Virus record (IMG/VR): IMGVR_UViG_3300023202_000247
Location: 124,001-188,000 of that record
Reading direction: 5' to 3' (one strand)
DNA length: 64,000 nt
Part shown: positions 4,858 through 64,000 of the stretch, piece after piece
Numbering within the stretch: the first letter of the stretch is position 1
How the letters are laid out: each line of letters begins with the position of its first letter
Position numbers and translations under genes: made by a program
The notes under the pieces: model-generated
Database searches by the model: none
What the model was told of the DNA's origin: nothing
The model's input: the letters and a program-made list of their open reading frames with translations, nothing else

Positions 4858-5523
4858 ATGAGGAAGAATTCTGAAGAGGAAGAACAAGAGTACACTTCGT
4901 GCCGAAAATACCAAGATGTTTACGATAAACTTGCAAAGAAAAGAAAGATAATTCTTTCAGAGGAAATAGATAGAAACATTGCAACGGCTATAGTTGGAAT
5001 GCTGTTTCTCTTCGATGTGGAAGATGATGCCACACCAATAGAATTGTACATCAACTCTCCGGGTGGAGAGGTAGAACAGTTCTTTGCCATCTATGACGCA
5101 ATGAACTCAGTTAGAGCCCCTGTTGCAACCTATTGTGTAGGAGAGGCATCTAGTGCGGCGGCAATCCTTTTAGCATCTGGACATAAAGGAATGCGATATG
5201 CTGCACCCAATGCCCATATCATGATTCATCAGATACAAATCTATGGTGGTGTTGATGGTAGTGGTACGACGATAGAGAACGAGGCCAAGGCTATTAAAAA
5301 GATGAAGCGTCATCTTACAGAAATTATAGCAAAGCATACTGGTCAGACTTATCGTAAAGTAAATAGAGACTGTGAGATTGATAAGTATATGACTGCTCAA
5401 GAATCATTAGAGTATGGTATAATTGATCATATCATGCCGATTCAAAAAGAAATTCCAGAGCTGAAGAAATCATCTCGAGGCAGACGTTCCAAGAAGCTTC
5501 CTGCTAAGAATAACGAGGCATAG
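4858..5523 (+). CDS. clpP: ClpP-family protease subunit
   Basis: IELYINSPGG, GEASSAAAILLA (Ser), IMIHQ (His), DKYMTAQESLEYGIID. Confidence 0.92.
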   Translation: MRKNSEEEEQEYTSCRKYQDVYDKLAKKRKIILSEEIDRNIATAIVGMLFLFDVEDDATPIELYINSPGGEVEQFFAIYDAMNSVRAPVATYCVGEASSAAAILLASGHKGMRYAAPNAHIMIHQIQIYGGVDGSGTTIENEAKAIKKMKRHLTEIIAKHTGQTYRKVNRDCEIDKYMTAQESLEYGIIDHIMPIQKEIPELKKSSRGRRSKKLPAKNNEA

Positions 5524-5530
5524 GTATATG
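5509..5530 (+). promoter_or_regulatory. putative late promoter motif AATAA-N4-GCAT-N6-ATG
   Basis: same spacing at 29407, 29763, 36139. Confidence 0.5.
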
Positions 5531-7000
5531 CCACGCAGTAGAGCAAAAGATCCACAGCAAGAGCAGCTTAGAGAGCGTAAAGACCAATGGAATAAAGAGG
5601 TTAGCAAGCTTATTACTGCTCTAATAGCTTTGAAGAAAGGTGTTAATGGTCAACCAATCGATGATATTGGATTGCCATCGTCTAGAATTACAGAGCCACT
5701 TCCACCACAAGTTGGTCAAATTGGAAATGGGTTGGGTACACGTTTCACTCAGATGTTTTCGGATTTGGACCGAATCATTTCTGAGCAAGACTCGTACTCA
5801 TCACAATTCACTCAACAAAGAGAACAAAAGAATCAAGATAGGTTGAGAGAGATGCAAGAAAGAGATAACCTTACAACAGCATCTCTCACCGCTCATGCTT
5901 CGAATAAATTCACGAGGATACTGACGTATCTCAAAAGTCCATTCCAATTTGGAGATAAAGATCGCGCGGCTCGTATTTCTATGTTGAGGGCCGCGGCCAA
6001 AATGTATGACAATGTTAGTGATGTTGGAGATGCCATTCTCAAACGAAACAGAACGTCCATACCAGAAGCTTTTTATGATGCATTGAATATATATCTTACA
6101 GCTGATAAAGAGTTCTTTGATAAAGTAGATGCTTTGTATGAAAGCAAAAAAGCAAAGAAAGAAAAAGTTGAAGAGCTGGTTGGTGAAAAGAAAGAAGAGG
6201 TAAAGCCCAAGGAACCTGAGCCGAATCCTGAGCCTGCTCAGCCTGCTCAGCCGGCTCAGCCAGTTGTCCCAGTTGATTCTGACAAGGACGGTCTCATTAC
6301 AAACAATGAGGTTAAAGTTGGTCAGTTGAAAAGCTTATTGAACCAACAACTTGGAAGAATTGAAAAATTGCAATTATCATTTTCTAAGGTTCAAAATTCT
6401 AATGAGGAAGCTGCAAACTTCAACTCTTACATGGGCTTCTTGCAATCATCCATAACAGATATGATAACTACACTTGATGCTGGTGGAGGTAATATAAACG
6501 AACTTACCAAATCATATAAGAAAATTGATGGTGATTTATCTGCGTTTGAACAACGTATCAGTTCCGTAGCATCGATTGAAAATGAAATGATGCGCAAGGT
6601 TGCTGGTAATATGGTTGGACGCTGGTTCCGTCGTAGACTGCTTGACATATTTCAAAGTGACGATTCAGAACTTAGATTGATACTAGAACAAGATACTAAT
6701 GTTCTTAAAAAAGATTTAAACGAGGTAATGAATGTATTAGAGTCTTCTAGTGCTGATATAGATACGGTTCGGAAACTTGCAGGGGACGTTGCATTGTCTC
6801 TTGCTACCATGGCTGCGACACTTCAACGATTGGCAGGAATTCACAATTCAATTTCTCGTGTCAAACACCTAACTGAAAAGTCTAAAGGTAAGACAATAAA
6901 GCTTTTAGATATTAAAGATGCAGATATAAAAAAACTAAGTTTGATGAGTCGTAAATACTATAGCATTGGCGACAAGATGAAAAAGGATGATGATGGATAA
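5528..7000 (+). CDS. hypothetical helical protein with PAQ linker, possibly an internal virion protein
   Basis: 490 aa; EPEPNPEPAQPAQPAQP; two similar domains after TAHA and RKVA. Confidence 0.6.
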   Translation: MPRSRAKDPQQEQLRERKDQWNKEVSKLITALIALKKGVNGQPIDDIGLPSSRITEPLPPQVGQIGNGLGTRFTQMFSDLDRIISEQDSYSSQFTQQREQKNQDRLREMQERDNLTTASLTAHASNKFTRILTYLKSPFQFGDKDRAARISMLRAAAKMYDNVSDVGDAILKRNRTSIPEAFYDALNIYLTADKEFFDKVDALYESKKAKKEKVEELVGEKKEEVKPKEPEPNPEPAQPAQPAQPVVPVDSDKDGLITNNEVKVGQLKSLLNQQLGRIEKLQLSFSKVQNSNEEAANFNSYMGFLQSSITDMITTLDAGGGNINELTKSYKKIDGDLSAFEQRISSVASIENEMMRKVAGNMVGRWFRRRLLDIFQSDDSELRLILEQDTNVLKKDLNEVMNVLESSSADIDTVRKLAGDVALSLATMAATLQRLAGIHNSISRVKHLTEKSKGKTIKLLDIKDADIKKLSLMSRKYYSIGDKMKKDDDG

Positions 7001-7418
7001 GGTTTCTATCGGTAATCATGAATTTAAAACTATTGTTGCTATTACTGATGAAGAGCAGCAGCGTGGGTTGATGTTTGTAGAGTGGCCGCCACCCGTTATG
7101 AGTTTTCCAGTCGTTACGGCACAGGTTCGTCAGTTCTGGATGAAAAATACTCAAGTACCTCTTGACATCGTATTCTGCCGTGATAATGTTGTGGTTGCTA
7201 TTTGTGAAGGTGAACCTCACAGTACGAAGATGGTTGGTCCTCGATGTCCAACCGACCTTGTGGTTGAATTACCACATGGCACGGCTGATGCTTGCGGGAT
7301 TCAGCCGGGAGATCCAGTGAGGCTGAAATTGTCTCAGGAGACTCTAACGCGCCGCGCCAAACACCTGATGACCGGCATATTCGGCTCAAAAGGTAAAAAT
7401 CTTGCACGGTCAATCTGA
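6987..7418 (+). CDS. DUF192 family protein
   Basis: EEQQRGLMF, FWMKNTQVPLDIVF, VVELPHG...GIQPGD. Confidence 0.85.
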   Translation: MMMDKVSIGNHEFKTIVAITDEEQQRGLMFVEWPPPVMSFPVVTAQVRQFWMKNTQVPLDIVFCRDNVVVAICEGEPHSTKMVGPRCPTDLVVELPHGTADACGIQPGDPVRLKLSQETLTRRAKHLMTGIFGSKGKNLARSI

Positions 7419-7430
7419 CCGTGTTATGGT
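7402..7430 (+). promoter_or_regulatory. sigma70-like promoter with a palindromic operator-like site in the spacer
   Basis: TTGCAC-N17-TATGGT; CACGGTCA-atc-TGACCGTG at 7405-7423. Confidence 0.45.
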
Positions 7431-7465
7431 GTAGCTGTAATTGAGCAGCGGCCAACTATAAGGGG

Positions 7466-7493
7466 TTGACTTTATCGTCAGTCTGGTTAAGTT
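7466..7493 (+). promoter_or_regulatory. sigma70-like promoter positioned for a leaderless FtsK mRNA
   Basis: TTGACT-N16-TAAGTT, 7 nt before ATG 7501; no SD. Confidence 0.55.
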
Positions 7494-7500
7494 GTATTTC

Positions 7501-8523: not shown

Positions 8524-8554
8524 ATGATGGGCGCTAAGCGCCCATCATTCATGC
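8518..8554 (+). terminator. perfect 18-bp inverted repeat at the FtsK stop
   Basis: GCATGAATGATGGGCGCT-a-AGCGCCCATCATTCATGC; no U tract. Confidence 0.6.
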
Positions 8555-8563
8555 CTGACCTAA

Positions 8564-14525: not shown

Positions 14526-16682
14526 ATGCAATCAAAATTAGTAATAGTTGAGTCACCTGCCAAGGCAAAAACGATTGCCAAATATCTTGGTAAAGATTAT
14601 ATAGTTGAATCTACCATTGGGCACATAGCTGATCTATCTACAGGTGGAGTAAACAGACTCGGTGTAGATATCAAAAATGGTTTTACTCCCAAGTATCAAA
14701 TTCTAAAAGATAAGAAAGATCGTGTTGCGGCAATAGTTGATGCTGCTAAACGTAGTAGCAAAGTATATATAGCATCTGACCCTGACAGAGAGGGTGAAGC
14801 TATTGCATGGCATGTTTTGAATGCGATCAAAAATGCTAACAAATCAGTGAAGCGTGTAGAGTTTCAGGAGATTACACCAGCTGCCGTCAAAAAAGGAATC
14901 TCAAACCCACGAGACTTGGATAAAGCATTGTTTGATGCACAACAGGCTCGGCGCGTTTTGGATAGACTCGTAGGCTTTATGGTATCTCCATATTTATGGG
15001 ATGCCTTTGGTCCTGGTCTCAGCGCTGGACGTGTTCAGTCTGTTTGTTTGCGTCTCATCGTTGATAGAGAAATTGAGATAGAAAATTTCAAACCAGATAC
15101 ATACTGGGAAATTTCAGCAACTCTAGAAAAGAATAAAGAAAAATTTGTTGCCAAATACCCAACTAGAATAAAAGATAAAAAGAAATCGGATAACATAAAA
15201 AATGATTTAGATAACAGTACTTTTAAAGTTATCGATGTAAAAAAGAAACCAAAAAAGGTAAATCCATTTCCTCCATTTACCACGTCCAAGTTACAGCAGC
15301 TGGCAAGTAGTAAGTTCAAGTTCAGTGCAAAGAAAACATTGAGTGTTGCTCAGAGCTTGTATGAAGGTGGTCATGTTACCTATATAAGAACAGATTCGAT
15401 TCGTAATAGTCCAGAATCAATTGCTGCTGCTAGGAAATGGTTGAAAGAAAATAAGTTCGAATATCCCAAATCAGCTAATGCTTATAAAGTAAAGGGAGGT
15501 GCGCAGGATGCGCACGAAGCAATTAGACCAACTAGTGTTGAACAAACACCAGAGAACTTCACTGGAACTGCTGACCAAAAAAAGATTTATCAATTGATAT
15601 GGCAAAGATTCGTTGCAAGTCAAATGCCTCCAGCCGAGTATGATACCGTTGCTGTGGTAGTGCAGTCATCAAAAGGTAATCACAAGCTCAAAGCAAACGG
15701 TCAAACATTAAAAAAACCTGGATGGCTCGAAATATCACCAGATGGCGCTTCGAAAAAGGACGTGAAGCTGCCCAATCTAGATGTGGGCGATGAGGTAAAG
15801 CTCACGCCACCCAAGGTTAAAAATGAAAAGAAAGAGACAAAGCCGCCGCCTCGTTATACCGATGCAACGATGGTTCGAGAACTCGAGACTAAAGGAATAG
15901 GCCGTCCATCAACATTTGCCGCTATTTTATCCAAGATTGCAGATCGTAATTATGTGGAAAAGGAAAACAATCACTATATTCCTACAAAAACCGGACGTCA
16001 AATTATCTTAGATTTAACCAAACATTTTTCATTCATGAATTATGATTACACGAAAAATATGGAGGATCAACTTGATAAGATAGGTGAAGGTAAGCTCGAA
16101 TATATTGAAATGATGAATGGTTTCTTTGCTTCATTTGAAGATGAATTACGTAAAGCTCATTTGTCACAATATAAAGATGGTCAAAGTGATTGTGCCAAAT
16201 GTGGTGGAAGAACCATATTAAAATATGGTAAGTATGGATATTATATTGCTTGTATAGATCGTGATTGTAATCATACACAAAGTGTTGAACTTGATGGAGA
16301 TACTATAAAGTATAAACAGTTCAATAAGATTGTTGATGGTATCGAATGTCCCAAGTGCGGAAGCACGATGGCTTATCGTGATGGAAAGTTCGGTCCATTT
16401 TATGCTTGCACAGTTTTTAGTTGTAAAGGTACTAGAAAAGTTCCTTTTGGAAAACAATGCAAACTGTGTGGGAACGAGTTATATTTAATAGTATTCAAAG
16501 CTGGAACTCCAGAATCAAATATGAAGTTAGCTTGCATGGGATATCCAAACTGTAAAAATGTCGAGGATGTTCCGGATGATGCTGAAATAAATTGGGTTGA
16601 CCCAGCAAAAATCAATCCGAAACATAATAAACAAGCAAAAAAGATATTAAAAAATGGGAAGCGAAGAAATAGATCCAAGTAA
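14526..16682 (+). CDS. topA: DNA topoisomerase IA with C-terminal zinc ribbons
   Basis: LVIVESPAKAKTI, ASDPDREGEAI, SAGRVQS, TYIRTDS (catalytic Tyr), AQDAHEAIRPT, GIGRPST. Confidence 0.95.
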   Translation: MQSKLVIVESPAKAKTIAKYLGKDYIVESTIGHIADLSTGGVNRLGVDIKNGFTPKYQILKDKKDRVAAIVDAAKRSSKVYIASDPDREGEAIAWHVLNAIKNANKSVKRVEFQEITPAAVKKGISNPRDLDKALFDAQQARRVLDRLVGFMVSPYLWDAFGPGLSAGRVQSVCLRLIVDREIEIENFKPDTYWEISATLEKNKEKFVAKYPTRIKDKKKSDNIKNDLDNSTFKVIDVKKKPKKVNPFPPFTTSKLQQLASSKFKFSAKKTLSVAQSLYEGGHVTYIRTDSIRNSPESIAAARKWLKENKFEYPKSANAYKVKGGAQDAHEAIRPTSVEQTPENFTGTADQKKIYQLIWQRFVASQMPPAEYDTVAVVVQSSKGNHKLKANGQTLKKPGWLEISPDGASKKDVKLPNLDVGDEVKLTPPKVKNEKKETKPPPRYTDATMVRELETKGIGRPSTFAAILSKIADRNYVEKENNHYIPTKTGRQIILDLTKHFSFMNYDYTKNMEDQLDKIGEGKLEYIEMMNGFFASFEDELRKAHLSQYKDGQSDCAKCGGRTILKYGKYGYYIACIDRDCNHTQSVELDGDTIKYKQFNKIVDGIECPKCGSTMAYRDGKFGPFYACTVFSCKGTRKVPFGKQCKLCGNELYLIVFKAGTPESNMKLACMGYPNCKNVEDVPDDAEINWVDPAKINPKHNKQAKKILKNGKRRNRSK

Positions 16683-16944
16683 AAATACAGATGAAGCTAG
16701 GCAAAGAGCAGTTAAATATCTAAAAAATTATCTTGATGAAATAGATGAGTGTAAAAAGTTAGAAGACTTTTTCATATTAGTTTTATCCGTGATGATTTAT
16801 TCCGAGTTGGTCCAAGCCCATTTCATAGATAGCATGGATGATAATGGCCAAGAACAATTGGCTTCTTTGAAAGATATGGCTGACCAAATCAAAAATGATG
16901 TTGTTGCTGGTTATCATAAGCAGGTAAATCAAAAACTTAATTGA
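16654..16944 (+). CDS. hypothetical protein
   Basis: 96-aa ORF in operon. Confidence 0.55.
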   Translation: MGSEEIDPSKNTDEARQRAVKYLKNYLDEIDECKKLEDFFILVLSVMIYSELVQAHFIDSMDDNGQEQLASLKDMADQIKNDVVAGYHKQVNQKLN

Positions 16945-17234
16945 AAGATTCACACATGAAGAAGTTTAAAAGTATCAAGCCGGAAACTGTTACTGTAAAG
17001 TTTGTTCCTTTAGAGGTAGAAGTTGATGGTGATCTTGAGAAGGCGTTGAGAAAATTCAAGATTTTATTTCAACGTGATCGAGTAATTGGACAGTTAAAAG
17101 AGCGCAGGTTTTATGAAAAACCATCGGAAAAGAAGCGGCGCAAGCGTAGAGAAGCGTATGGTCGTAGATTAAAAGATGAAATGATGCGTTCTGGAGAATG
17201 GGATAGGACTAGAAATAGAGAAGAAGATGACTGA
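16941..17234 (+). CDS. rpsU: ribosomal protein bS21
   Basis: DLEKALRKFK...LKERRFYEKPSEKKRRKRREA. Confidence 0.9.
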   Translation: MKDSHMKKFKSIKPETVTVKFVPLEVEVDGDLEKALRKFKILFQRDRVIGQLKERRFYEKPSEKKRRKRREAYGRRLKDEMMRSGEWDRTRNREEDD

Positions 17235-26738: not shown

Positions 26739-26777
26739 CTCTAGGCATAATTTTAGATATCGGTAGGACACGGAGGT

Positions 26778-26942
26778 ATGATGTTTCCTTTTAATAATAA
26801 GCCTAAAGATAAACAAAAAGTTCAGTACGAATACCTCTACATAGAAAAACATATTCCGCAAGATATACCACAACCTCCTCGTAAAAAAGAGGAAAATGAT
26901 GAACGTGGTGTAGTGGTAATAGATATCTATGGCGAAGACTAA
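26778..26942 (+). CDS. small hypothetical protein (54 aa; not in ORF track)
   Basis: GGAGG directly before two in-frame ATGs; MMFPFNNKPK...ERGVVVIDIYGED. Confidence 0.55.
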   Translation: MMFPFNNKPKDKQKVQYEYLYIEKHIPQDIPQPPRKKEENDERGVVVIDIYGED

Positions 26943-28021: not shown

Positions 28022-28310
28022 TTGAGACGCCTAAATGCCCAAAATTACTGCCTTAGAATAAGTGTTTTAGTTCTAGGCATAACCCAACTATAATGATGTG
28101 ACTTATGGATCAGAAAGACGTAGAAAAGATAACCATGTTAGTTACAGATCTCATTTTGAGGTTATCTGTAATGGAAGATATCTTAAAAGAAAAAGGTTTA
28201 TTGGAAGAGCAGGACTATGTACAGAGATTGGAAATCAAAAGCCGCGCAATGTCCGATCAACTTCGCGATGCCTTGGGCAAAACCGATCCATAGTAAGTTG
28301 CATTTAATTT

Positions 28311-28982: not shown

Positions 28983-29408
28983 GTGGAAGAGAATCTATAT
29001 TTAGTTATGGGTTGTTGGGGTCGTCAGGATGATGGTTTCATCAGCTGTCCCAGTGTTGAAAACAGAATCTTGCATATCCACAGCGGTTTGGAAAATTATG
29101 ACGCTATCATGGATTACCTTGATAGCGTCAGACTTTTTGATAGACCTCTTTATGATAACAATGCTATAAGGCATCTTATTTATAATATGCAAGACAAGTA
29201 TTTGGAACAGCTCAGGCCGATTTGGAACCCCAAGAGGTATGACCTATTAGAAAAGTTTATTGTAAGCCACAAAAGCTGTGGTGTATACGTAAAGTTGTGT
29301 TTAATCAATCCCGAATTGGAGCCAAAAAAGGAAGAACGGAGCGATGATGAAGCTGTTTTCGTTCAAGCTGCGCCAAATTTGAAGCTTGTTGATGATACAT
29401 ACAGCTAA
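28983..29408 (+). CDS. hypothetical protein
   Basis: 141-aa ORF. Confidence 0.6.
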   Translation: MEENLYLVMGCWGRQDDGFISCPSVENRILHIHSGLENYDAIMDYLDSVRLFDRPLYDNNAIRHLIYNMQDKYLEQLRPIWNPKRYDLLEKFIVSHKSCGVYVKLCLINPELEPKKEERSDDEAVFVQAAPNLKLVDDTYS

Positions 29409-29428
29409 TTACATCGCATACTTTCATG
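29407..29428 (+). promoter_or_regulatory. putative late promoter motif
   Basis: AATTA-catc-GCAT-actttc-ATG. Confidence 0.5.
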
Positions 29429-29767
29429 AGTACAGTTACAGAAGACGCCTATGAAAGACTCAAAAAAATGCTTGATGGCAAAGAAAAAGAAATCAAGTAT
29501 GTAATGTTAACTTTTTCAGAGAAAGATAAATATGAGATTTATCAACTGATAAAGAATTCTTTGATTAGGCATGCAGATGTTCCAGATTATCACGCAGATA
29601 TATTAAGCGATCATTTACTTACTAGTGTTTTGGGCATATTTGACCTGAAACAAAAGAAACATGCTAACAATATAGCCCGTCAAGGTGGTAAGGTATTGTC
29701 TGAAGAAGAGGTAGAAAAGCAAGAGACCGGAAAGCTTTCTCCTATGTTTTCTCGTGTTGATGAATAA
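29426..29767 (+). CDS. hypothetical protein
   Basis: 113-aa ORF, no SD, preceded by the motif. Confidence 0.6.
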   Translation: MSTVTEDAYERLKKMLDGKEKEIKYVMLTFSEKDKYEIYQLIKNSLIRHADVPDYHADILSDHLLTSVLGIFDLKQKKHANNIARQGGKVLSEEEVEKQETGKLSPMFSRVDE

Positions 29768-29784
29768 TTTCGCATCTTTTCATG
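29763..29784 (+). promoter_or_regulatory. putative late promoter motif
   Basis: AATAA-tttc-GCAT-cttttc-ATG. Confidence 0.5.
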
Positions 29785-35778: not shown

Positions 35779-35834
35779 TTGATATATTCTTAGATAGAGG
35801 AGGTTGAACATCACATGATGTAAGCAGGTACAAA

Positions 35835-36140
35835 ATGCTCAAAGTAACTACAAGAACTTGTGAAGAATATGAATCTATTCTTCGCTCTCGCGGAGAAGCT
35901 GGATTGTATAAATATGCTTTGGGTCTTGGTGTAATTAATAGGGTTGATTATGCTTTTACAGAGGTGATGTTGCTTGATAAGTCGGACGCTTTTTTCTCTT
36001 TAGCCAGAGGTACGGGCAATGACAATTATTTCGTAATAGGCAGAGTATTACGAAAGGCTGCACACCGTTTATATAGATATGCTCATAAAGATAACGAAGA
36101 GCATCCTGTTAATGGACGCTTTCTCAATCTAGTAAAGTAA
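35835..36140 (+). CDS. hypothetical protein
   Basis: 101-aa ORF. Confidence 0.55.
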   Translation: MLKVTTRTCEEYESILRSRGEAGLYKYALGLGVINRVDYAFTEVMLLDKSDAFFSLARGTGNDNYFVIGRVLRKAAHRLYRYAHKDNEEHPVNGRFLNLVK

Positions 36141-36160
36141 AATGATAGCATTAGTATATG
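36139..36160 (+). promoter_or_regulatory. putative late promoter motif
   Basis: AAAAT-gata-GCAT-tagtat-ATG. Confidence 0.45.
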
Positions 36161-38226: not shown

Positions 38227-39480
38227 ATGCAAGAACAAATAAGAAATGACAAGTACAATATTGATTTTGAAAAGTTGGAAGATTGCAAATTCAAAATTTA
38301 TTATGAGTCTAATAAAAGTTCTGTAAAAGAAAAGAGAAGTGAGGCGATTGAGGAGCTTCGTAAGCTTCCAATACCGGGCTTTCGTCCAGGCAAAGCTACA
38401 AATCAAGCTATCGAAAGTAAATTCAGTCAAAAGATTGATGATTATATCGTCAATCAACTAGCTGGTTCCGCTGTAGATGCTGTTCTTTTCGAAACGCAAT
38501 GGAAAACGATTGGGCGGCCTAGAATTGAAAAGTATTCTGTTGATGATGGCAAATTCAATTGTGAGTTTGTTTTGTGTACACGTCCAGCAGTAGAGTTGCC
38601 AGAGTATCAATCTTTTGAAATTCCAAAGCCAGATGTTAATGATGACACTGAAGGACGTGTGGAAAAGATGCTTGGTGATATCCGCATGCGTCACGGTGAT
38701 ACAGAGCTGTATCAAGAGGGTGACTTCGTTGAGCGTGGAGACCAAATAACATTGGATATCAAAGCTACATGCAATGATGTTGTAATTGATGACTTTTGTG
38801 AAAATGGAATTCTTTACCAAGTTGGAAATGGTTGGAAAGACATTTTAGACTTCGATGACAATATCTTGGGAATGATGCCTGATGATATTCGAGAGTTCGA
38901 GGTAACGGTTCCAGTATATGGAAGGATAGATATAAAAGTTACGTTGCATGCTGGTACCAAGAAAAAGATGGCGGCGTTGACCGATGAACTGGCTCAAAAA
39001 GTCGGGCTGGAAAATGTTGATGATATCAAAGAGAAGGTGCGTGTCGTTGTAAAGCAAAATATAGATCAAGAACGCTCTTATCTCGTTGCTGAGCAGGTTC
39101 AAAATAGGCTTTTGGATGAGGCCAAGGTTGATGTGCCAAAATGGCTATTATCTTTAGAGGCGCAAAATGCTGCATCTCAAAGCGGAGTGGAGTTCGAATC
39201 CCTTTCTGATGATGAGAAAAAGATATTTGAACAAGATGCTGAGAAAAGAGTCAAGATGAGTCTCATCTTTGAAACTATTCGTGATGAACAGCCTGAAGCT
39301 GTGCTTAGCGATGAAGAGTTGAGACAAGCTGTGTCACAACAGCTCATGGCTCGTGGAATTGATCCGGAAAAGTTCCTCGTCGAGCAGCATGCACAAGGTC
39401 AACTGTTGGGTATGATGGCTGCGTTGCAACATCAGTACACATTACAATGGCTAATTGATCAGGTTACACTGATTGATTGA
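38227..39480 (+). CDS. tig: trigger factor
   Basis: IPGFRPGKA ribosome-binding signature, FKBP-like middle (GDQITLD, FDDNILGM), helical C domain. Confidence 0.85.
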   Translation: MQEQIRNDKYNIDFEKLEDCKFKIYYESNKSSVKEKRSEAIEELRKLPIPGFRPGKATNQAIESKFSQKIDDYIVNQLAGSAVDAVLFETQWKTIGRPRIEKYSVDDGKFNCEFVLCTRPAVELPEYQSFEIPKPDVNDDTEGRVEKMLGDIRMRHGDTELYQEGDFVERGDQITLDIKATCNDVVIDDFCENGILYQVGNGWKDILDFDDNILGMMPDDIREFEVTVPVYGRIDIKVTLHAGTKKKMAALTDELAQKVGLENVDDIKEKVRVVVKQNIDQERSYLVAEQVQNRLLDEAKVDVPKWLLSLEAQNAASQSGVEFESLSDDEKKIFEQDAEKRVKMSLIFETIRDEQPEAVLSDEELRQAVSQQLMARGIDPEKFLVEQHAQGQLLGMMAALQHQYTLQWLIDQVTLID

Positions 39481-40714: not shown

Positions 40715-43399
40715 ATGATTAATTTACCTTATGTTAGTTTACACAATCAAACTACTTTTTCTACGATGGATGCATTGGTTAGCGTCCAAGAATTGTGTGA
40801 GCTGGCAAAGAAAATGGGACATGAGGCGGTGGCCATTACCGATCATGGAACCTTAGCATCCATGTGGGATGCCTATAAAATAGGTAAAAAGATGGGAATC
40901 AAAGTGATTCCCGGCTGTGAATTCAACTTCGTCGAGTCTGTCGACAATGATGAACCTTTACGTCACATAATTCTTTTGGCAAAAAATGCCACGGGTTATC
41001 ACAACTTACTGCTTCTCAATAAATTAGGCTTTGATAATAAAGCTATCATGTTCAAGTCTGCAATTCCGAGAATTGATTGGAAGCTTTTAGAAGATCACAG
41101 CGATGGTTTGATTTGTACCACAGCTTGTGGCAACGGAATCATCAGTCAGCTCATCATGCAAAAGAAACATGATGAAGCTAAAGAGTCTTTGAAAAGACTC
41201 AAAGATATATTTGGTGATGACCTAGCTATCGAATTGCAAGCACATGCTCTCGTACGAAAAGAGACGGCTTATTCCGGAGCTATTGATCAAAGGTTCATCA
41301 ACCTAAACCTTAAAAAGCTTTCAGAAGAACTCGGCATTAGAGCAATCGTTACGACGAATACACATTATGCTGATAAAGATGATTATCGTGCTCACGATAC
41401 ACTTCTAGCAATTAGAAGTGGTCAAACTGTATTCTCCGGAAATCGATTGAAATACAATGTCAATGATTTTTATTATAAACATCAGTTGGAGTTAGCATCA
41501 TTCTTTGTTCGTTTGCGTGGGTTGTATCCACAAAGCTTTGTTGAAAGTTTGTTTGAGAATACAGTTTACTTTGCAAACAAGTGCGAAGATCCCGAATGGA
41601 TTGATTTGAAGTATTCCAATCCGACCGGGAAGGAGTTGCCAAAATTTCCAGTCAGAGATGAGCCAAATCTAGATGCATTCGATGCTTGGGCAAAAAACAA
41701 TGCTCCCGGTCTTGATGATGACGTTGCGTACTTGAGGTATCGTTGTGACCTGGGATTGAAAAAGATGATCCCAGAATCAAAACATGATGAATACAAAGCA
41801 CGTTTGAAGGAAGAGTTCGATGTTATCGAATATCACGGCTTTAGCTCTTACATGCTCATTGTTGCCGATTTCATTAATTATGCAAGAAAAAATGGTATTC
41901 GCGTTGGACCCGGAAGGGGATCGGTAGCTGGCTCGCTGATTGCGTATCTATTGGAAATTCACGTAGCAGACCCCATCAAGTATGGTCTCATTTTCGCTCG
42001 TTTTCACAACAAAGAGAAAACATCATTTCCAGATATTGATGTTGACTTTGCTCCATCGGGACGTGACGAGGTACAAAACTATATTAGACAAAAATATGGT
42101 GAGGACTATGTTGCTCATGTTTCCAATGTTAATACTATAACGCCGAAGGTGTATGTAAAAGACATTGCCAGAGCACATGAGTTTGGTGGTGATAGAAAAG
42201 AGGCGGTAAAGATTGGAAATGAAATTGCTGACTTCATGCCTTCAGGCCCGAGCGCTCCCAAAAGCTTGGAAAAGGCCAAAGAGGAGTATGCTTTGTTTGC
42301 AGAGGCAATGGTTCAATTTCCGGAGCTTGCGGAGTTTGCCGATAAAATCGGAGGCAAGCCAAGAGCTTGGTCTACACACGCCGGTGGTTTAATCATTGGT
42401 GCCCGACCATTACCGGGTCTCGTTCCAGTACGTCGAGATGTACACGACTCCACGGCAATCGAGTATGACAAAGACAAGGCTGAAGAAATTGGCTTGGTCA
42501 AGATGGATACTCTCGGGTTGGAAACGCTCGACATCATAACCGATACCTATAAGTTGATTAAAGCAGTGGGTAAGGATGTACCACCAGACCCTCCGAGATT
42601 TGATGAATATGACAAAGAAACTTATGATTTAATATCTTCTGGTGATACCCTTTGTATTTTTCAGTTGAGCGGTATTGCGTCCACACTTTGTCAGTCAATC
42701 AAACCAAATAGCATCGAAGAGATTAGTTATATCAATGCGCTCGTACGTCCAAGTGCAAAAGCAATTGTTAAAGATTTCATTGCAACTCGTGAAGGAAAAA
42801 AGAAAGTAGAATTGCTGGATTCTTCTTTGGAACGTGCCTTTGGTGAAACATATGGGTTCGGACTATATGAAGAGTGTTTGCTTTATTTGGCTCAAGATGT
42901 TGCAGGATGGGATCTTCACTCAGCTGATAGGCTGAGAAAACTTACAAAAGAGAAAGGTAAGAATCCCAAAAAAGTTGCTGGGTGGCGTGAAGAGTTCATC
43001 AATGATGGTAAGAGCCAAGGAATTGATGAACATATTGTTACTAAGATTTGGGATGAAGTTGTAAATGGTTTCCAAGGATATGGGTTTAATAAATCATTAT
43101 ATTCTTTGCAGAAAGTTGATACATTTACTAAGGATGGTCAATTTTTAACATCCAAAGCAATTAAATATATAAGTTCAAATGAATATGTGCGTTCTCGTGA
43201 TGAAAAAACCGGTGTGGACATTTATGTTAGGGTAATTGATAATCATGACCACGGAAAGTTAGAAGTTGTTGATATTGAATTAGAAACTGGAGAAAAGGTT
43301 AGATGTACTATGAATCATAAGTTTAGAACAGTTGAAACCGGTGATATGGTACCTCTTCATCAAATTATTGAGAATGACTATTCTATAGTAGTGAAATGA
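40715..43399 (+). CDS. dnaE: DNA polymerase III alpha, N-terminal part fused to N-intein
   Basis: PHP (AITDHG, PGCE), GPGRGSVAGSL, FPDIDVDF, STHAGG, LVKMDTLGL; extein ends at GYGFNK. Confidence 0.95.
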   Translation: MINLPYVSLHNQTTFSTMDALVSVQELCELAKKMGHEAVAITDHGTLASMWDAYKIGKKMGIKVIPGCEFNFVESVDNDEPLRHIILLAKNATGYHNLLLLNKLGFDNKAIMFKSAIPRIDWKLLEDHSDGLICTTACGNGIISQLIMQKKHDEAKESLKRLKDIFGDDLAIELQAHALVRKETAYSGAIDQRFINLNLKKLSEELGIRAIVTTNTHYADKDDYRAHDTLLAIRSGQTVFSGNRLKYNVNDFYYKHQLELASFFVRLRGLYPQSFVESLFENTVYFANKCEDPEWIDLKYSNPTGKELPKFPVRDEPNLDAFDAWAKNNAPGLDDDVAYLRYRCDLGLKKMIPESKHDEYKARLKEEFDVIEYHGFSSYMLIVADFINYARKNGIRVGPGRGSVAGSLIAYLLEIHVADPIKYGLIFARFHNKEKTSFPDIDVDFAPSGRDEVQNYIRQKYGEDYVAHVSNVNTITPKVYVKDIARAHEFGGDRKEAVKIGNEIADFMPSGPSAPKSLEKAKEEYALFAEAMVQFPELAEFADKIGGKPRAWSTHAGGLIIGARPLPGLVPVRRDVHDSTAIEYDKDKAEEIGLVKMDTLGLETLDIITDTYKLIKAVGKDVPPDPPRFDEYDKETYDLISSGDTLCIFQLSGIASTLCQSIKPNSIEEISYINALVRPSAKAIVKDFIATREGKKKVELLDSSLERAFGETYGFGLYEECLLYLAQDVAGWDLHSADRLRKLTKEKGKNPKKVAGWREEFINDGKSQGIDEHIVTKIWDEVVNGFQGYGFNKSLYSLQKVDTFTKDGQFLTSKAIKYISSNEYVRSRDEKTGVDIYVRVIDNHDHGKLEVVDIELETGEKVRCTMNHKFRTVETGDMVPLHQIIENDYSIVVK
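43094..43396 (+). mobile_element. split intein N-fragment (101 aa, Ser1)
   Basis: starts SLYSLQKV right after FNK; G-x-x-E-V, IELETGEKVRCTMNHKF (block B TxxH). Confidence 0.88.
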
Positions 43400-45381
43400 C
43401 TAATGACTTAACGCAAAAATTCTTAAATAAGATCCCTAAACAATATCGTGAAAATATTGTGATCTTATCACCAGAAAAAGGTGGCAATTCAAGAGTAGAA
43501 TATCTGCATCCGATTTGTGGATGCAAAACAACCAGTACATTGAAGACTTTTGTTAAGCGAAAGTCTTTTGACAGTTGCTTAAAATGTTCCAATCAAAAAA
43601 ACTTTAACTACTATAAGAGTAAAATTGCTTTTCCGAATAATATAGATTTACTGGAGCCATTTCACGGTGGAGCAACAAAAGTTAGTTTCAAACACAATAT
43701 ATGTGAGTGTATAATAAACACAACATTGTCTAGACTGACCAACAGAGATCAGCTTGATTATTGTAAGAAATGCTATCAAGCATATTATTATGATTCAGCA
43801 TCAAATCTTGACAATGTAAAAATAATTGGTAAAAATAAAGGTTATAATTCTGACGCTGAGTATACATGCTCAAAATGTAGTAAAATATTTTATACGAAAC
43901 TTTCAAATCTTATTAACAGAAAAGATATTAGCAAGTGCCATGAATGCTCTAAACAAGAAACTTTAGATAGTTACTTGACGTTACTTTCTAAAGACATATT
44001 GAATAGAATAAAAGTTTTAAATCATAATGGCAGTTATTCTAGAATTAAATATGATAATCCATGCGGACATCAAACAGAATCAACTATATCTGATTTTGTG
44101 AAGCGCGAACAATTTGACTATTGTCAACATTGTTCTCAAAAAAAGAGTGTTACTGATTACATTGATTTGATTGATAAAAAGTATCATCAAAATATAGAAA
44201 TTGTTAAAGATTTGGGAGCAAAGTCTCCAATTATTTATACGTGCCCATCTTGTGGAAACAAAAGAAGATTAACTGTCAAATCACTACAACGTTTTGACGA
44301 TTGCTTGAATTGTAATAACAGTTGTCGTATTTCAAAGCAAGAAATGATTGATAATCTCAAGCCGTTTTTGAACAACATAAAAATCGTTGATGGTTTTCCA
44401 GGGCATAGAACCAGTGTTGTAACCGGTAACTGCGTTGCTTGTAATTCCAAGGTTGAAAACTATTACTTTAATTTTTCAAGATACTATACTTATTATAACG
44501 AACCAAGATGCAGTAGTTGCAGCCCAAAGAGCATAGAGCAAAAAATGCTGGCCAATTTTGTTGGGTCGTTAACAGATTTCATAGAAAATGATAAGTCAAT
44601 AATCAAATCATCAGAAACAGATCGTAACCTAGAAATCGATATTTATTGTCCTAAGGAAAAGTTTGCTATTGAATATAATGGTTTGCTTTGGCATTCCGAA
44701 AAATATGGAAAAGATAAGAATTATCATTTCTATAAAACAAGACAGTGTCAAGAGCATGGTATATATTTGTTACATATATGGTCAGATAAATATAAGAAAC
44801 ATCCAGAAATATATCACTCTATAATAAGATACTGTTTGGGTAAAATAAAGAATAGAATATTTGCAAGACGCTGTATTTTGAAAGAATTGGACAAGAATAT
44901 CTCAAGAGATTTTTTTACAACAAATCATCTTGATGGCAATGTCGGTTGTCTAAAAGCATGGGGTTTGTTTCATGATGAAAAGTTGATTCAAGCTATCTCG
45001 GTAAGGCGTGTGAGTAAGCAAAACAGTAAATACGCTTCTTATTTAGAAATTGCAAGAATGGCAACTCTTTTAAACCATTCAGTGGTTGGAGGCGAATCAA
45101 AACTGTTGAGCTTTGTTGAAAAGTTTGCTCGTGATAATGAATATGCTGGTATCTTGAATTATGTAAGTGCTGATTTTGGAAAGCCTCAACAAAATAAATA
45201 TCATTTTGAGTACAAAGGTATTACTGATGTTTCGTATTGTTATACGGATGGTAATAAAAGAATTTCTCGACAACGCCTTCAAAACAGACCTAAAGGTGTT
45301 AGTGAGCGCGCTCATGCCAATAGTTTGAATCTCTGGCGCGTTAATCTAACACCAAACTTCATTTATATATTGAATTTCTAA
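43396..45381 (+). mobile_element. free-standing homing-endonuclease-like gene: six zinc-ribbon repeats, Vsr/DUF559-like nuclease, C-terminal Mom/GNAT-like domain
   Basis: six Cys/His repeats; LEIDIY...AIEYNGLLWH; LEIARMA...VVGGESKLL; lies between the intein halves. Confidence 0.78.
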
Positions 45382-45491
45382 TGTCAAAAATAAAATCACT
45401 AAAACCGGTTGGTAAATTGCAAACATATGATCTGGAAGTTGACCATCCAGATCATCAGTATTATTTATCAAACGGAGTTTTAACTAGCAAC
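45381..45491 (+). mobile_element. split intein C-fragment (37 aa)
   Basis: MSKIKSLKPVGKLQTYDLEVDHPDHQYYLSNGVLTSN followed by Ser+1. Confidence 0.92.
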
Positions 45492-46715
45492 AGCCACTCT
45501 ACACTTTACTCTATGATATCATTTCATACTGCATATCTAAAAGCTCATTTTCCTTTAGAGTTTTTGGTTGCAAACTTGAAGAGTGAGACAAAAAAGACAT
45601 CAAACCCCAAGGCCAAGGACAATGTCTTAAAAATAAAGGACGAGATTCGTAGTCTTGGAATAAAGTTGATTGCTCCCAACGTAAACAACAGCTTGAGGGT
45701 TTACAAAATTATCACCGACAAAACGTTGATGACGGGACTCAACAGCATCAAGTATGTTAGCGATGATGCGATTGAAGATATTGTAGCTAAAAGACCATTT
45801 AAGAGCTATAGTGATTTTATTGCCAGAACAGATAGTCGCAAAGTAAGAGCCAACTCCATTCAAGCCCTTGCAGCATCTGGTTGTCTCGATGATTTCGGAT
45901 TACCACGTAAGTTGATGTTTCTTTACGCATCGGATTTTAGAAAGAAACAAAGCTCGGCTTTGAGAGCAGCCAAAAAGGCTGGTAATGATGAGTTGGTGAA
46001 GCAGATTACCGAAGATTTCGAATATCCATGGCCAGAGGATTCTGAATGGTCGGTGCAAGAACTTTTTGCCTTGGAAGAGTATTTCATGGGGGAGGGTTTG
46101 AGCGGCACGGTACAAGAACGCTATGTCGGTTTCTTCGATTCTAGCTCTATTGATTATAGACTTTTGCCCAAGATGTTTCCATATCGTCTTCTTGACGAAG
46201 ATGATAAAGTTAACAGAAAAAAGAATACACACCCAATACCAAATAGTAAAGTTCCATATTTGAAAGGAATTATAAAAAGACTATTTTCTTTTAAGGTTAA
46301 GAAAGATGATTCGCCAATTCGCGGTCAAGAAATGGCAATTATTACCATACAAGATCCATATGGAACGGATATGACTTGTATAGCGTTTCCTGATACATGG
46401 GTGCATATACAGAAGCGCATCTATGAGGATTTGTCTGGACGCTCTGCAAAACTAGATGTTGGTCTTGCTGTTGCCATGACCGGTTCGTTTCAGCACGAAA
46501 ATGAACATGTTCATTCATTCATCATTGATGATATATTGGATATACAGGAGTCTCCGGCTCTTCCAAAGGATAGAGATTCTAAAAGTATCAAACTGCCTCG
46601 TAAGAAAAAGGTTAAAGAGGACCCCGAGAAATTGGAAAAAGAAGAACTAGCTGAAATCATGGAAGATGATATGATTCAAGAGGGTTTTGTGTTTGATGAG
46701 CCGGAACCATTATAA
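45381..46715 (+). CDS. dnaE: DNA polymerase III alpha, C-terminal part preceded by C-intein
   Basis: SHSTLYSMISFHTAYLKAHFPLEF, GLNSIKYV (HhH), OB fold MAIITIQD. Confidence 0.93.
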   Translation: MSKIKSLKPVGKLQTYDLEVDHPDHQYYLSNGVLTSNSHSTLYSMISFHTAYLKAHFPLEFLVANLKSETKKTSNPKAKDNVLKIKDEIRSLGIKLIAPNVNNSLRVYKIITDKTLMTGLNSIKYVSDDAIEDIVAKRPFKSYSDFIARTDSRKVRANSIQALAASGCLDDFGLPRKLMFLYASDFRKKQSSALRAAKKAGNDELVKQITEDFEYPWPEDSEWSVQELFALEEYFMGEGLSGTVQERYVGFFDSSSIDYRLLPKMFPYRLLDEDDKVNRKKNTHPIPNSKVPYLKGIIKRLFSFKVKKDDSPIRGQEMAIITIQDPYGTDMTCIAFPDTWVHIQKRIYEDLSGRSAKLDVGLAVAMTGSFQHENEHVHSFIIDDILDIQESPALPKDRDSKSIKLPRKKKVKEDPEKLEKEELAEIMEDDMIQEGFVFDEPEPL

Positions 46716-59536: not shown

Positions 59537-59545
59537 GGTTTCTAA

Positions 59546-61460: not shown

Positions 61461-61488
61461 TTACATAACTTTAATGTGAAGGTTATCA

Positions 61489-62421: not shown

Positions 62422-62424
62422 TAA

Positions 62425-63081
62425 ATGAGTAAAGCATTAAAAATTGATGTTCCTGTAACAAGGGATAAAAATGAAATAGAAAGATCGGGAAAGCTTAGCG
62501 GTTGGCTTGCGGACTTTGCAGATCATTATAAGCAAATGGAATCGCAGCAAAAAACAGCTGTAGAAGTAAACACTGGCCCGTCTATTCAAGAGAAAATGCA
62601 TGCCATTTTGAATGGCAATTCTCGCTACAACAACGTTGAAGAGGCTGTTGCGGATTTACACGAGCGCACCGGACTGAAACAATATTTGGAAGCTAAGGCT
62701 TCTGATGTTTCAGATGCTGCTAAATATATTTTAGCAGATGATGAAGGTGGTGACGAAAAAAAAGCTGAAAGGCCGGCATTGCTAGAGCGAGTTCCTGCTA
62801 TAGAGCATTACATTCGCAACATGGTGAACAATGGAGCTAGCTTGCCGGCAATACTATTTGGAATAGCTTCAACATTTGTACAAGATGGTGTAAGCGATCA
62901 AGATATTGATGACATGGATCTTGCCAGATATATCAATCAGTTCATCATGTCCAGAGAACCATCTGAGACACCATTGGATGATCCAAACATTGGTAGAGAT
63001 GTTGGCCTCAAAGTTGATTTGCATGATGTTGATCAAAACAAAGACCCATTTGTCGGCTTGACTCCAAAAAAGGTAATGTAA
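62425..63081 (+). CDS. hypothetical protein
   Basis: 218-aa ORF before the terminase. Confidence 0.6.
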   Translation: MSKALKIDVPVTRDKNEIERSGKLSGWLADFADHYKQMESQQKTAVEVNTGPSIQEKMHAILNGNSRYNNVEEAVADLHERTGLKQYLEAKASDVSDAAKYILADDEGGDEKKAERPALLERVPAIEHYIRNMVNNGASLPAILFGIASTFVQDGVSDQDIDDMDLARYINQFIMSREPSETPLDDPNIGRDVGLKVDLHDVDQNKDPFVGLTPKKVM

Positions 63082-63112
63082 TCAATAATATGCATAATAT
63101 CAATTATTTTAT

Positions 63113-64000
63113 ATGGTTGATGTTAACATTAGTCCTTTAGATGCATTTAAAAGCAGCATTCTAAATTTAGATCCTGTTGCATTTTGCGAAAATAATTTGA
63201 CGCTTGATGGTCAACAGTTTCGTTTAACCAATAATGGTTACAAACCATTTGCTGATATTTATCGTTATATCGGCATCAAAGCTTTGGAGCCAGATGCATT
63301 GCCGGTAATTCTCGTTAAAGGCAGACAGGTGGGCGCAACTACGATGGCAGCTGCGCTTGCGTGTTATTTCATGGCCAGTAGGTTATTTGGAAATAACGGT
63401 AGGCCGCCAATGCGTGTGATTCACCTGTTTCCTACTTTGGGAATGGCAGCTGCTTATTCCAAAATGAAATTCAGCCAAATGGTTGGTTCTGCAAAGCCAG
63501 CTCCAGGTGAATTTAAAGGAAATGGTGCTCCAAAAACATATATAGAAAAAGAGCTTGATACTAGTAGCCCAGCTAATAACAACCTTCATTTCAAGAAATT
63601 TTTGGGTGATAACCAGTTGGAAATAGAAAGCACTGGTCCTGACGGAAACAGACTTCGTGGACGTACAACAGATTGTATTCTAGCTGATGAAGTTCAAGAC
63701 ATTCCACAGATAGCCCTTGGTGCTATTACCAAGACACTTACCAAGGCTCAATATGGTAAATCAGCGCAAGGTATTCAAGTTTATTTTGGAACACCAAAGC
63801 AAAAAGGTACAGCTTATTATAATATGTGGATGAAATCCACACAGCAATATTACCATTTAAAATGTGAAGAATGTGAATCTTATTTTCCGTTGTACAGACC
63901 AGATGTTGAATGGGAAAGTATATGGCTGTATGGTTACATCGTTAAATGTACCGAATGTGGACACGAGCAAGATAAGCGTGTAGCTGCTGAAAGTGGAAAG
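63113..64000 (+). CDS. terL: terminase large subunit (GpA-like), 3' truncated by the window end; not in ORF track
   Basis: open frame from ATG 63113: ILVKGRQVGATT (Walker A), RLRGRT, ILADEVQD (Walker B), FGTP, CEEC/CTEC. Confidence 0.85.
   Translation, partial: MVDVNISPLDAFKSSILNLDPVAFCENNLTLDGQQFRLTNNGYKPFADIYRYIGIKALEPDALPVILVKGRQVGATTMAAALACYFMASRLFGNNGRPPMRVIHLFPTLGMAAAYSKMKFSQMVGSAKPAPGEFKGNGAPKTYIEKELDTSSPANNNLHFKKFLGDNQLEIESTGPDGNRLRGRTTDCILADEVQDIPQIALGAITKTLTKAQYGKSAQGIQVYFGTPKQKGTAYYNMWMKSTQQYYHLKCEECESYFPLYRPDVEWESIWLYGYIVKCTECGHEQDKRVAAESGK

What the first reader, a model, noticed from the sequence alone, without database searches (positions are those of the whole stretch)
5509..63115. 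Recurrent AAWWW-N4-GCAT-N6-ATG motif: candidate late promoter giving leaderless mRNAs
Seen: four genes have GCAT exactly 6 nt before the ATG, an A/T-rich pentamer 4 nt further upstream, and no convincing SD. They are AATAAcgagGCATaggtatATG (5528), AATTAcatcGCATactttcATG (29426), AATAAtttcGCATcttttcATG (29782) and AAAATgataGCATtagtatATG (36158). A variant, AATAAtatGCAT (63084), precedes the terminase. The identifiable downstream genes look late/structural. Inference: a compact promoter with no -35 element whose start site falls on or beside the AUG, implying a dedicated late transcription and leaderless translation programme.
Basis: partly seen in the sequence, partly recalled or inferred. Interest (0 to 1): 0.72.

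Follow-up and report, generated by a model that had tools for sequence, protein, structure and literature searches.

The report
Compact promoter-like gaps before phage genes
In an uncultivated 321-kb phage, a few genes that lack a ribosome-binding site are preceded by what looks like a minimal promoter (a -10 box, then a CAT start site 8 bases before the ATG); this is a familiar kind of signal, real for about half of the reported sites, and not shown to be "late" or truly leaderless.

Summary
All four sites and the terminase variant are in the sequence as described. The pattern as written is not clearly above chance. GCAT at -10 occurs at 6 of 370 predicted starts (1.4 expected), and the full pattern occurs 5 times against about 1 for other spacings. 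A/T pentamers overlap the upstream stop codon at three sites. At 5528, GCAT is ClpP's last codon plus its stop, and a GAGG lies 10 nt upstream of the ATG.

A sharper version does hold. A -10-like hexamer (nAnnnT), then N4-5, then CAT at -9 from the ATG occurs at 6 starts. Local-composition shuffles give 0.36, and no other offset exceeds 2. Window sites 29782 and 36158 fit; 29426 is marginal; 5528 does not fit.

Relatives carry the same block, TATATT-N4-CATA, at a variable 6-9 nt from the ATG. That pattern points to a promoter with its start site. No phage RNA polymerase was found; an ECF-like sigma factor is present.

My best reading is -10-only internal promoters giving SD-less leaders of about 8 nt. 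"Late" is unsupported. A true leaderless geometry belongs to a second motif, TGATATAT-N7-8-ATG. No RNA data were listed, so no start site is proven.

The parts
29763..29784 (+). Best window member. Hexamer AATAAT at 29763-29768, which contains the TAA stop of gene 29426-29767. Then ttcg, CAT at 29773-29775, cttttc, and ATG at 29782. There is no SD.
   Evidence: strict composite, spacer 4; gap of 14 nt, no SD-like tetramer.
36138..36160 (+). Second good member. Hexamer TAAAAT at 36138-36143, whose TAA is the stop of gene 35835-36140. Then gatag, CAT at 36149-36151, tagtat, and ATG at 36158. There is no SD. The 17-nt spacer is unchanged in ~90-98% relatives and absent in relatives at 57% identity or less.
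   Evidence: 0 of 17 changes against 0.38 at nearby third codon positions; distant orthologues have TAAnATG or an SD.
29407..29428 (+). Marginal member. Hexamer AATTAC at 29407-29412, with C in place of the -7 T. Then atcg, CAT at 29417-29419, actttc, and ATG at 29426. There is no SD.
   Evidence: fails the strict hexamer test.
5509..5530 (+). Probably not a member. AATAAC at 5509-5514 and GAGG (SD-like) at 5515-5518. The GCAT at 5518-5521 is the Ala codon plus the start of the TAG stop (5521-5523) of ClpP. The gap to the ATG at 5528 is 4 nt.
   Evidence: (ClpP, E 1.6e-60).
63084..63115 (+). Terminase upstream region. Hexamer AATAAT at 63084-63089, then atg, then CAT inside GCATAA at 63092-63097. 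A 15-nt A/T-rich stretch without SD follows, then ATG at 63113. The architecture is the same but the predicted leader is longer (about 19 nt).
   Evidence: terminase; relatives' terminase genes carry GAATAT/GGATAT/TAATAT-N5-CAT-N6-ATG.
4836..4841 (+). GCATAA copy in the 45-nt spacer before ClpP (ATG 4858). The spacer has 1 change in 45 nt in the close relative.
26745..26750 (+). GCATAA copy 6 nt after the upstream stop. It is followed by an SD (ggagg) and ATG at 26778.
28077..28082 (+). GCATAA copy, followed by TATAAT and ATG at 28105.
35781..35787 (+). GATATAT (with the preceding T it reads TGATATAT, an extended -10-like box) in the 56-nt spacer before gene 35835. This is an example of the second motif class.

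Best explanation
The window belongs to a 321-kb uncultivated phage that has no RNA polymerase of its own and so must use the host enzyme. In a handful of the very short gaps between its genes there is a minimal sigma-70-type promoter with three parts. First comes a -10-like hexamer (AATAAT, TAAAAT, CATAAT or AATATT), which often reuses the TAA stop of the upstream gene. Next is a 4-5 nt spacer. Last is CAT, whose A would be the transcription start. The ATG follows 8 nt after that A, so the transcript would carry an 8-nt leader with no Shine-Dalgarno sequence. It would have to be translated in an SD-independent way, or be helped by coupling to the upstream gene on longer transcripts.

Sequence shows the architecture, its fixed position relative to start codons, and its recurrence in relatives. 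The transcription start, the polymerase or sigma factor involved, the timing and the mode of translation are all inferred.

The terminase site fits with a longer leader. 29426 is marginal. 5528 is better explained by the ClpP stop codon plus an ordinary SD.
For: - Position-specific enrichment in the phage's own genome. The hexamer-N4/5-CAT composite occurs 6 times at offset -9, against 0-2 at every other offset. In 2000 shuffles that keep local composition the mean was 0.36 and the maximum 4. CAT alone at -9 occurs 12 times against 4.6.
- The composite is 14-fold enriched at gene starts among all + strand ATGs.
- Of five TAA spacers of exactly 14 nt, three carry CAT at -9 and read TAATTTnnCAT, although their flanking genes are unrelated.
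- In relatives, upstream of the orthologues of window gene 35835, the block AGTATATT-N4-CATAT is conserved in at least 6 loci. The sequence on both sides and the CAT-to-ATG distance (6-9 nt) vary. Five further orthologue groups show the same layout.
- Terminase genes of five relatives carry nAATAT-N5-CAT-N6-ATG.
- No -35 partner accompanies the sites.
- No multisubunit or T7-like RNA polymerase was found in this contig or in five 97-100% complete relatives. Host RNAP with a sigma-70-family factor is therefore expected. One ECF-like sigma factor is phage-encoded.
- Established knowledge: sigma-70 holoenzymes start 5-8 nt downstream of the -10 hexamer, preferably at a purine preceded by a pyrimidine, classically the A of CAT.
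- The 36141-36157 spacer has 0 of 17 changes in relatives whose nearby synonymous sites differ by 26-38%.
Against: - There is no transcript evidence. No RNA run was listed, and read laying gave DNA variants only.
- The class is tiny (about 6-8 genes of about 370) and its definition was refined after seeing the sites.
- The hexamers lack the T at -12 in most cases and lack a correctly placed TG extension. As unaided -10-only promoters they would therefore be weak.
- In four of the six hexamers the A/T content is partly forced by the TAA stop codon.
- TATAWT-N4-CATA is not over-represented genome-wide in five complete relatives against a reversed-pattern control (39 against 36).
- All short spacers, not only these, are conserved in close relatives (about 5% against 26-33% at third codon positions). 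That conservation is therefore not specific to the motif.
- The motif is not conserved at orthologous positions in more distant relatives.
- An 8-nt SD-less leader has no established efficient route to translation in most bacteria.
Confidence: 0.45

Rival explanations
1. There is no dedicated signal. These are ordinary short, A/T-rich, SD-less gaps. The downstream gene is translated by ribosomes that terminate at the TAA 14-17 nt upstream and re-initiate. The shared letters come from the stop codon, local composition and chance.
For: The pentamer or hexamer overlaps the stop codon at most sites. At 5528 the GCAT is coding sequence plus a stop, and an SD is present. Distant orthologues of gene 36158 are directly coupled (TAAnATG) with no spacer at all. 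About half of this phage's genes lack an SD-like word anyway (44% carry one, against 20% in random 15-mers). There is no genome-wide excess of the pattern in relatives.
Against: The composite occurs 6 times at one offset against 0.36 in composition-matched shuffles. Three of five 14-nt TAA spacers carry CAT at -9. The TATATT-N4-CATA block is conserved in relatives, where the hexamer lies outside the stop codon.
Confidence: 0.28
2. The motif acts on RNA, not on DNA. It could be a processing site or the binding site of a translational regulator, in the manner of T4 RegA, which binds A/U-rich sequence next to the AUG. It could also be a feature read by ribosomes carrying the phage's own S21 protein. 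Any of these would set the translation of a small regulon.
For: In this genome the distance to the ATG is fixed (CAT at -9), which is typical of signals read together with the start codon. The phage encodes ribosomal protein S21 and a trigger factor. All members lack an SD.
Against: In relatives the hexamer-to-CAT distance is fixed while the CAT-to-ATG distance varies by 3 nt. That is the opposite of what a start-codon-anchored RNA signal predicts. No RegA-like protein or nuclease was looked for or found. The hexamer closely matches a -10 box.
Confidence: 0.12
3. One reading: a dedicated late promoter class whose transcripts begin at the AUG itself, giving a separate late, leaderless translation programme.
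For: A promoter-like architecture is present. The terminase has a related element. Three own-genome members lie in the structural-gene region (192232 directly after the portal gene, 221903, 235520).
Against: The two good window members sit in the replication module. The hexamer is 13-14 nt, not 6-7 nt, from the ATG. The leaderless geometry and the clearer link with virion genes (portal, baseplate wedge, endonuclease VII) belong to another motif, TGATATAT(A/T) 7-13 nt before the ATG.
Confidence: 0.1

Closest known systems
Sigma-70-type promoters that work without a -35 element (extended -10 / '-10-only' promoters)
   Same: A TATAAT-like hexamer with A at position 2 and T at position 6, no -35 partner, and a pyrimidine-purine (CA) start context 5-6 nt downstream. 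The host polymerase is expected because no phage polymerase was found.
   Different: The T at -12 is usually missing. A correctly placed TG is seen in the other class, TGATATAT.
Leaderless mRNAs of Actinobacteria, Deinococcus and some phages (for example lambda cI from PRM; the mycobacterial survey PMC4633059)
   Same: No SD, with the promoter directly abutting the coding sequence.
   Different: In leaderless genes the -10 box ends 6-7 nt before the A of the ATG. Here it ends 13-14 nt before, which predicts an 8-nt leader. The phage's TGATATAT-N7/8-ATG genes (G000 249054, 286741, 298273) and their counterparts in relatives do have the leaderless geometry.
T4 late promoters (TATAAATA, read by gp55 with gp33 and the sliding clamp)
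   Same: A single A/T-rich -10-type element without a -35, placed just upstream of genes inside tightly packed gene arrays.
   Different: The sequence differs, and T4 late mRNAs have normal SD-bearing leaders. The only sigma factor found here is ECF-like with a region 4, unlike gp55. A late time class is not shown.
Compact late promoters of jumbo phages with their own non-virion RNA polymerase (AR9 AACA-N6-TA/G; phiKZ TATG; PMC5312081)
   Same: A very short promoter made of a 4-6 nt element plus a fixed-distance start dinucleotide. It occurs in a very large phage genome, and some copies are internal to operons.
   Different: Those promoters need a phage multisubunit RNAP. None is detectable here or in complete relatives. 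AR9 leaders are 26-491 nt long.

Membership tests
Sigma-70-type -10-only promoter | -10 hexamer with A at position 2 (-11) and T at position 6 (-7) | tested here: inconclusive
   Met at 29782 (AATAAT), 36158 (TAAAAT), the terminase site (AATAAT) and four sites outside the window. Not met at 5528 (AATAAC) or 29426 (AATTAC).
Sigma-70-type -10-only promoter | TG at -15/-14 (extended -10) to compensate for the missing -35 | tested here: not met
   29782 reads atgAATAAT, with the TG one base too close. 36158 reads aagTAAAAT. No -35 is present either.
Sigma-70-type -10-only promoter | Purine start 5-8 nt downstream of the hexamer, preceded by a pyrimidine | tested here: met
   The A of CAT is the 6th or 7th base after the hexamer at all six strict sites and in the relatives' conserved block. 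This is sequence only.
Sigma-70-type -10-only promoter | A primary transcript 5' end at the site | not testable with these tools
   No RNA run was listed. The only runs holding the sequence are DNA.
Leaderless mRNA | Transcript starts at, or within about 3 nt of, the A of the AUG (-10 box ends 6-7 nt upstream) | tested here: not met
The geometry is met only by the separate TGATATAT-N7/8-ATG class.
Jumbo-phage nvRNAP late promoter (phiKZ/AR9 type) | Phage-encoded multisubunit RNA polymerase | tested here: not met
   No Rpb2_6 or Rpb1_2 match. No DFDGD motif in six frames. None in five 97-100% complete relatives. The contig itself is estimated to be 75% complete.
Late (structural) gene regulon | Downstream genes are virion or packaging genes, or are shown to be expressed late | tested here: inconclusive
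   The terminase has a related element, and three members lie in the structural region. Genes 29782 and 36158 lie in the replication neighbourhood, and most products have no family match.
Shine-Dalgarno-led initiation | GGAGG-like word 5-13 nt before the start codon | tested here: inconclusive
   Absent at 29426, 29782 and 36158. Present at 5528 (GAGG at 5515-5518).

The most novel reading that the evidence does not exclude
This huge phage carries its own ribosomal protein S21, trigger factor and sigma factor. It may run a sizeable SD-independent expression programme built from minimal promoters that abut start codons. The programme would have three parts: the hexamer-N4-CAT-N6-ATG class (8-nt leaders), the TGATATAT-N7/8-ATG class (true leaderless geometry, shared across the clade), and the strand-specific intergenic word GCATAA. 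GCATAA could be a start-site or recognition element for a phage-directed form of the host polymerase.
Probability: 0.15. Interest if true: 0.65.

Novelty: new member of a known kind. Interest (0 to 1): 0.38.

Why it matters
Nothing is known about how huge uncultivated phages without their own RNA polymerase organise transcription and translation. If these elements are real promoters, they show that such phages place minimal -10-only promoters inside 14-20-nt gaps and produce very short or absent leaders. That would tie in with their puzzling habit of carrying ribosomal protein S21. It would also give annotators a way to predict transcription units in this clade. Taken on its own, the finding is an ordinary kind of signal with few members and no experimental support.

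Tried and rejected
- Counting GCAT-Nk-ATG over the genome showed no preference for k=6.
- A start-aligned mixture model gave only a noisy AATAA...ATA component of 24 members at K=6. It was dominated at first by a paralogue family whose conserved 70-nt junction is protein-coding.
- A home-made ZOOPS EM seeded with GCATAA diverged and was discarded.
- GCATAA as 'Ala-stop' of upstream genes was rejected for most copies, which lie after the stop. It is true for one copy in this genome (249041) and for one orthologue group in relatives.
- GCATAA as a tandem in-frame stop was rejected because the frames do not agree.
- A search for a shared -35 or flanking consensus around GCATAA or GATATAT found none by inspection.
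- The Bacteroidetes TAnnTTTG reading of the relatives' block fits only one locus.
- Close relatives (~90-98%) were too similar, and all their short spacers are conserved.
- Read laying listed only 40 of 629 variants.
- Relatives of genes 5528, 29782 and 192232 were not found in IMG/VR.
- A genome-wide pattern count in five complete relatives showed no excess.
- Literature searches for GCATAA and for huge-phage promoters gave nothing relevant.
- Megablast against deposited phages gave no match.


Full report
**What the window is.** The window is bases 124,001-188,000 of a single 321,461-bp IMG/VR virus contig. The record is classed as linear and CheckV estimates it to be 75% complete. The contig is about 40% G+C, and nearly all long ORFs lie on the + strand (86 of 90 ORFs of at least 300 aa). 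My own ORF-based gene set has about 380 genes covering 87% of the sequence.

The window encodes the following:
- ClpP (4858-5523)
- a topoisomerase (14526-16682)
- ribosomal protein S21 (16941-17234)
- SbcD and SbcC (31673-35061)
- a dNMP kinase
- a Cas4-like nuclease
- trigger factor (38227-39480)
- a split Pol III alpha (40715-43399 and 45381-46715)
- the large terminase (63113 onward)

The portal gene follows at G000 188980. No deposited phage is similar at the DNA level. By DNA polymerase (about 57% identity) the phage belongs to a large clade of 250-480-kb uncultivated phages.

**Checking the observation.** All four sites and the terminase variant read exactly as reported, and the ATGs open the ORFs listed. 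Three points weaken the description.

- First, the A/T pentamer overlaps the stop codon of the preceding gene at 29426, 29782 and 36158.
- Second, at 5528 the 'GCAT' is the last codon and the start of the stop codon of ClpP (GCA TAG, gap of 4 nt).
- Third, at that same site a GAGG lies at a workable SD distance.

Genome-wide the pattern as written is weak. GCAT-N6-ATG is no commoner than other spacings. GCAT at -10 is found at 6 of 370 starts against 1.4 expected, which does not survive correction for the number of words and positions tested. The whole pattern occurs 5 times against a mean of 1.0 for other spacing combinations. All six GCAT(-10) starts lie between 120.9 and 160.2 kb. One of them (window 14321) is the reverse complement of a start codon of a divergent gene.

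**What is really enriched.**

(a) CAT, rather than GCAT, is the commonest trinucleotide position class at -9 (12 starts against 4.6 in local shuffles). Six of these are preceded, 4-5 nt upstream, by a hexamer that has A at position 2, T at position 6 and at least 4 of 6 matches to TATAAT. The composite occurs 6 times at offset -9 and 0-2 times at each of 27 other offsets. Shuffles that keep the composition of the 24 nt next to each start give a mean of 0.36 and never more than 4. Among all 8444 + strand ATGs, the composite is 14-fold enriched at gene starts.

The six are G000 120941, 153782 (window 29782), 160158 (window 36158), 192232, 221903 and 235520. Three of them share TAATTTnnCAT in a 14-nt gap between unrelated genes.

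(b) In the 116 short + strand spacers (6-120 nt, 4545 nt in all), the most over-represented hexamer is GCATAA. It occurs in 12 spacers against about 1.4-1.6 expected and never on the other strand. One-mismatch variants are at chance. Its distance to the ATG ranges from 2 to 55 nt, and an SD follows when there is room. The terminase copy at 63092 is one of these.

(c) TGATATAT(A/T) lies 7-13 nt before the ATG of about a dozen genes, mostly between 188 and 300 kb. They include the portal, a baseplate wedge protein and an endonuclease VII homologue. TATAWW is concentrated 5-11 nt before starts (19 against about 5).

**Evidence from relatives.**

*Distant relatives.* Orthologues of gene 36158 in 28 distant relatives have no spacer. 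The upstream stop abuts the ATG (TAAnATG), or an SD is present. A 56%-identical relative has a 9-nt gap without the motif. The element is therefore young at that position.

*Close relatives.* In contigs at about 90-98% identity, the 17-nt spacer is unchanged while nearby third codon positions differ by 26-38%. All short spacers behave this way, however, with about 5% change. This shows constraint on spacers in general, not on the motif in particular.

*The same architecture at other genes.* This is the informative result. Upstream of the orthologues of window gene 35835, relatives carry a conserved block AGTATATT-N4-CATAT. The flanks and the CAT-to-ATG distance (6-9 nt) vary. Five other orthologue groups show hexamer-N4/5-CAT 6-9 nt before an SD-less ATG (14 sites against 2.7 in shuffles). 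Terminase genes of five relatives carry GAATAT, GGATAT or TAATAT, then N5, then CAT-N6-ATG.

A fixed hexamer-to-CAT distance combined with a variable CAT-to-ATG distance is what a -10 box with its start site predicts. A ribosome-binding or start-codon-anchored element predicts the opposite.

*The leaderless class in relatives.* GATATAT-N7/8-ATG also recurs in relatives, with variable spacer sequence and no SD, in at least three orthologue groups.

*A negative control.* The exact word TATAWT-N4-CATA is not over-represented genome-wide in five complete relatives against a reversed control (39 against 36). If these are promoters, they are few.

**Which polymerase.** No multisubunit RNAP domain, no DFDGD motif and no T7-like RNAP is found in the contig. 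For the T7-like family the control genomes could not ring, so that negative result is weak. Five 97-100% complete relatives also lack a beta-prime domain. The phage therefore depends on the host enzyme. It encodes one ECF-like sigma factor of 224 aa with regions 2 and 4. Two-hexamer promoters are not enriched around the sites, and none pairs with them.

**Most likely mechanism.** The hexamer acts as a -10 box, and the A of CAT, 6-7 nt after it, is the start. This follows the textbook rule for sigma-70 holoenzymes. The transcript then carries AU plus six bases before the AUG and no SD. This is inferred, because no RNA run could be listed and the only runs that hold the sequence are DNA.

How an 8-nt leader would be translated is open. 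About 56% of this phage's starts lack any SD-like word, against 39% in relatives. The phage also carries S21 and a trigger factor, so SD-independent initiation is plausible but untested.

'Late' is not supported. The best window members sit among replication genes, and their products have no informative family. The exception is an Ig-like CHB_HEX_C_1/Fn3_assoc domain at the N terminus of the 36158 protein.

**Rivals.**
- Chance plus stop-codon composition, with translation by termination-reinitiation, remains a serious alternative. It certainly explains site 5528.
- An RNA-level signal is less likely because of the spacing behaviour in relatives.
- The role of GCATAA is unexplained. It may be a CATAAT-type -10 box, a start-site word or something else.

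**Verdict.** What is there is most likely a small set of minimal, -10-only promoter-like elements with short SD-less leaders. That makes it a new member of a known kind, of moderate interest. Its value lies mainly in what it suggests about expression in huge phages that lack their own polymerase.

Noticed in passing
window 40715-46715: The Pol III alpha gene is split. Part 1 (40715-43399) holds PHP, NTPase and finger domains, with a weak intein-splicing hit at its C-terminal end. Next comes a 661-aa homing/HNH-endonuclease-like ORF (43396-45381). Part 2 (45381-46715) carries the HHH_6 domain. A relative (L058) has one uninterrupted 1229-aa gene. This looks like a split intein or homing-endonuclease insertion.
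   Followed up: partly
window 4836, 23294, 26745, 28077, 63092; eight or more further copies elsewhere in G000: GCATAA is the most over-represented hexamer in short + strand intergenic spacers. It occurs in 12 spacers against about 1.5 expected and never on the opposite strand, and one-mismatch variants are not enriched. It often lies 4-12 nt after the upstream stop, at a variable distance from the next ATG. Its function is unknown.
   Followed up: partly
G000 188962, 218945, 233584, 249054, 260353, 265527, 286741, 298273; window 35781: TGATATAT(A/T), an extended -10-like box, lies 7-13 nt before SD-less start codons, including the portal, a baseplate wedge protein and an endonuclease VII homologue. 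With N7-8 the geometry is that of leaderless mRNAs. The same arrangement recurs in relatives with variable spacer sequence.
   Followed up: partly
window 16941-17234 and 38227-39480: The phage encodes ribosomal protein S21 (Pfam E 6.7e-15) and a trigger factor homologue (Trigger_N and Trigger_C). These are translation and folding functions that may relate to the many SD-less genes.
   Followed up: no
G000 309353-310027 (outside the window; L053:15353-16027): A 224-aa ECF-like sigma factor (Sigma70_r2 weak, Sigma70_r4_2; PHROG 351 and 1740). It is the only transcription factor of this kind found.
   Followed up: partly
G000 27.3-28.7 kb, 75.2-76.5 kb, 107.0-107.5 kb (outside the window): Tandem arrays of paralogous ~100-170-aa genes whose last ~70 nt and 3-nt junction to the next copy are nearly identical (...GACGGAAAACGTTACAAnCTAGAAGAnGTTTGAAAnATG). 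They dominate naive upstream-motif searches.
   Followed up: partly
G000 1-620 and 44047-45265 (outside the window): A tandem repeat at the contig start (motif recurring every 38/42 nt) and an array with a ~71-nt period containing AGGATGCTACGC. Neither was examined. They could be a terminal repeat or assembly artefact and an RNA-gene or repeat array.
   Followed up: no
window 8524-8563: The spacer contains a perfect G+C-rich hairpin (gatgggcgc-taa-gcgcccatc) without a T run, before a TTG-start gene. In the close relative the changes fall in the loop, so the stem is kept.
   Followed up: no
L139 (IMGVR_UViG_3300023214_000528, 112,959 bp): A second IMG/VR contig carries a 100%-identical copy of the 1186-aa gene at G000 235520. 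It is probably the same phage assembled from another sample and could help to complete the genome.
   Followed up: no
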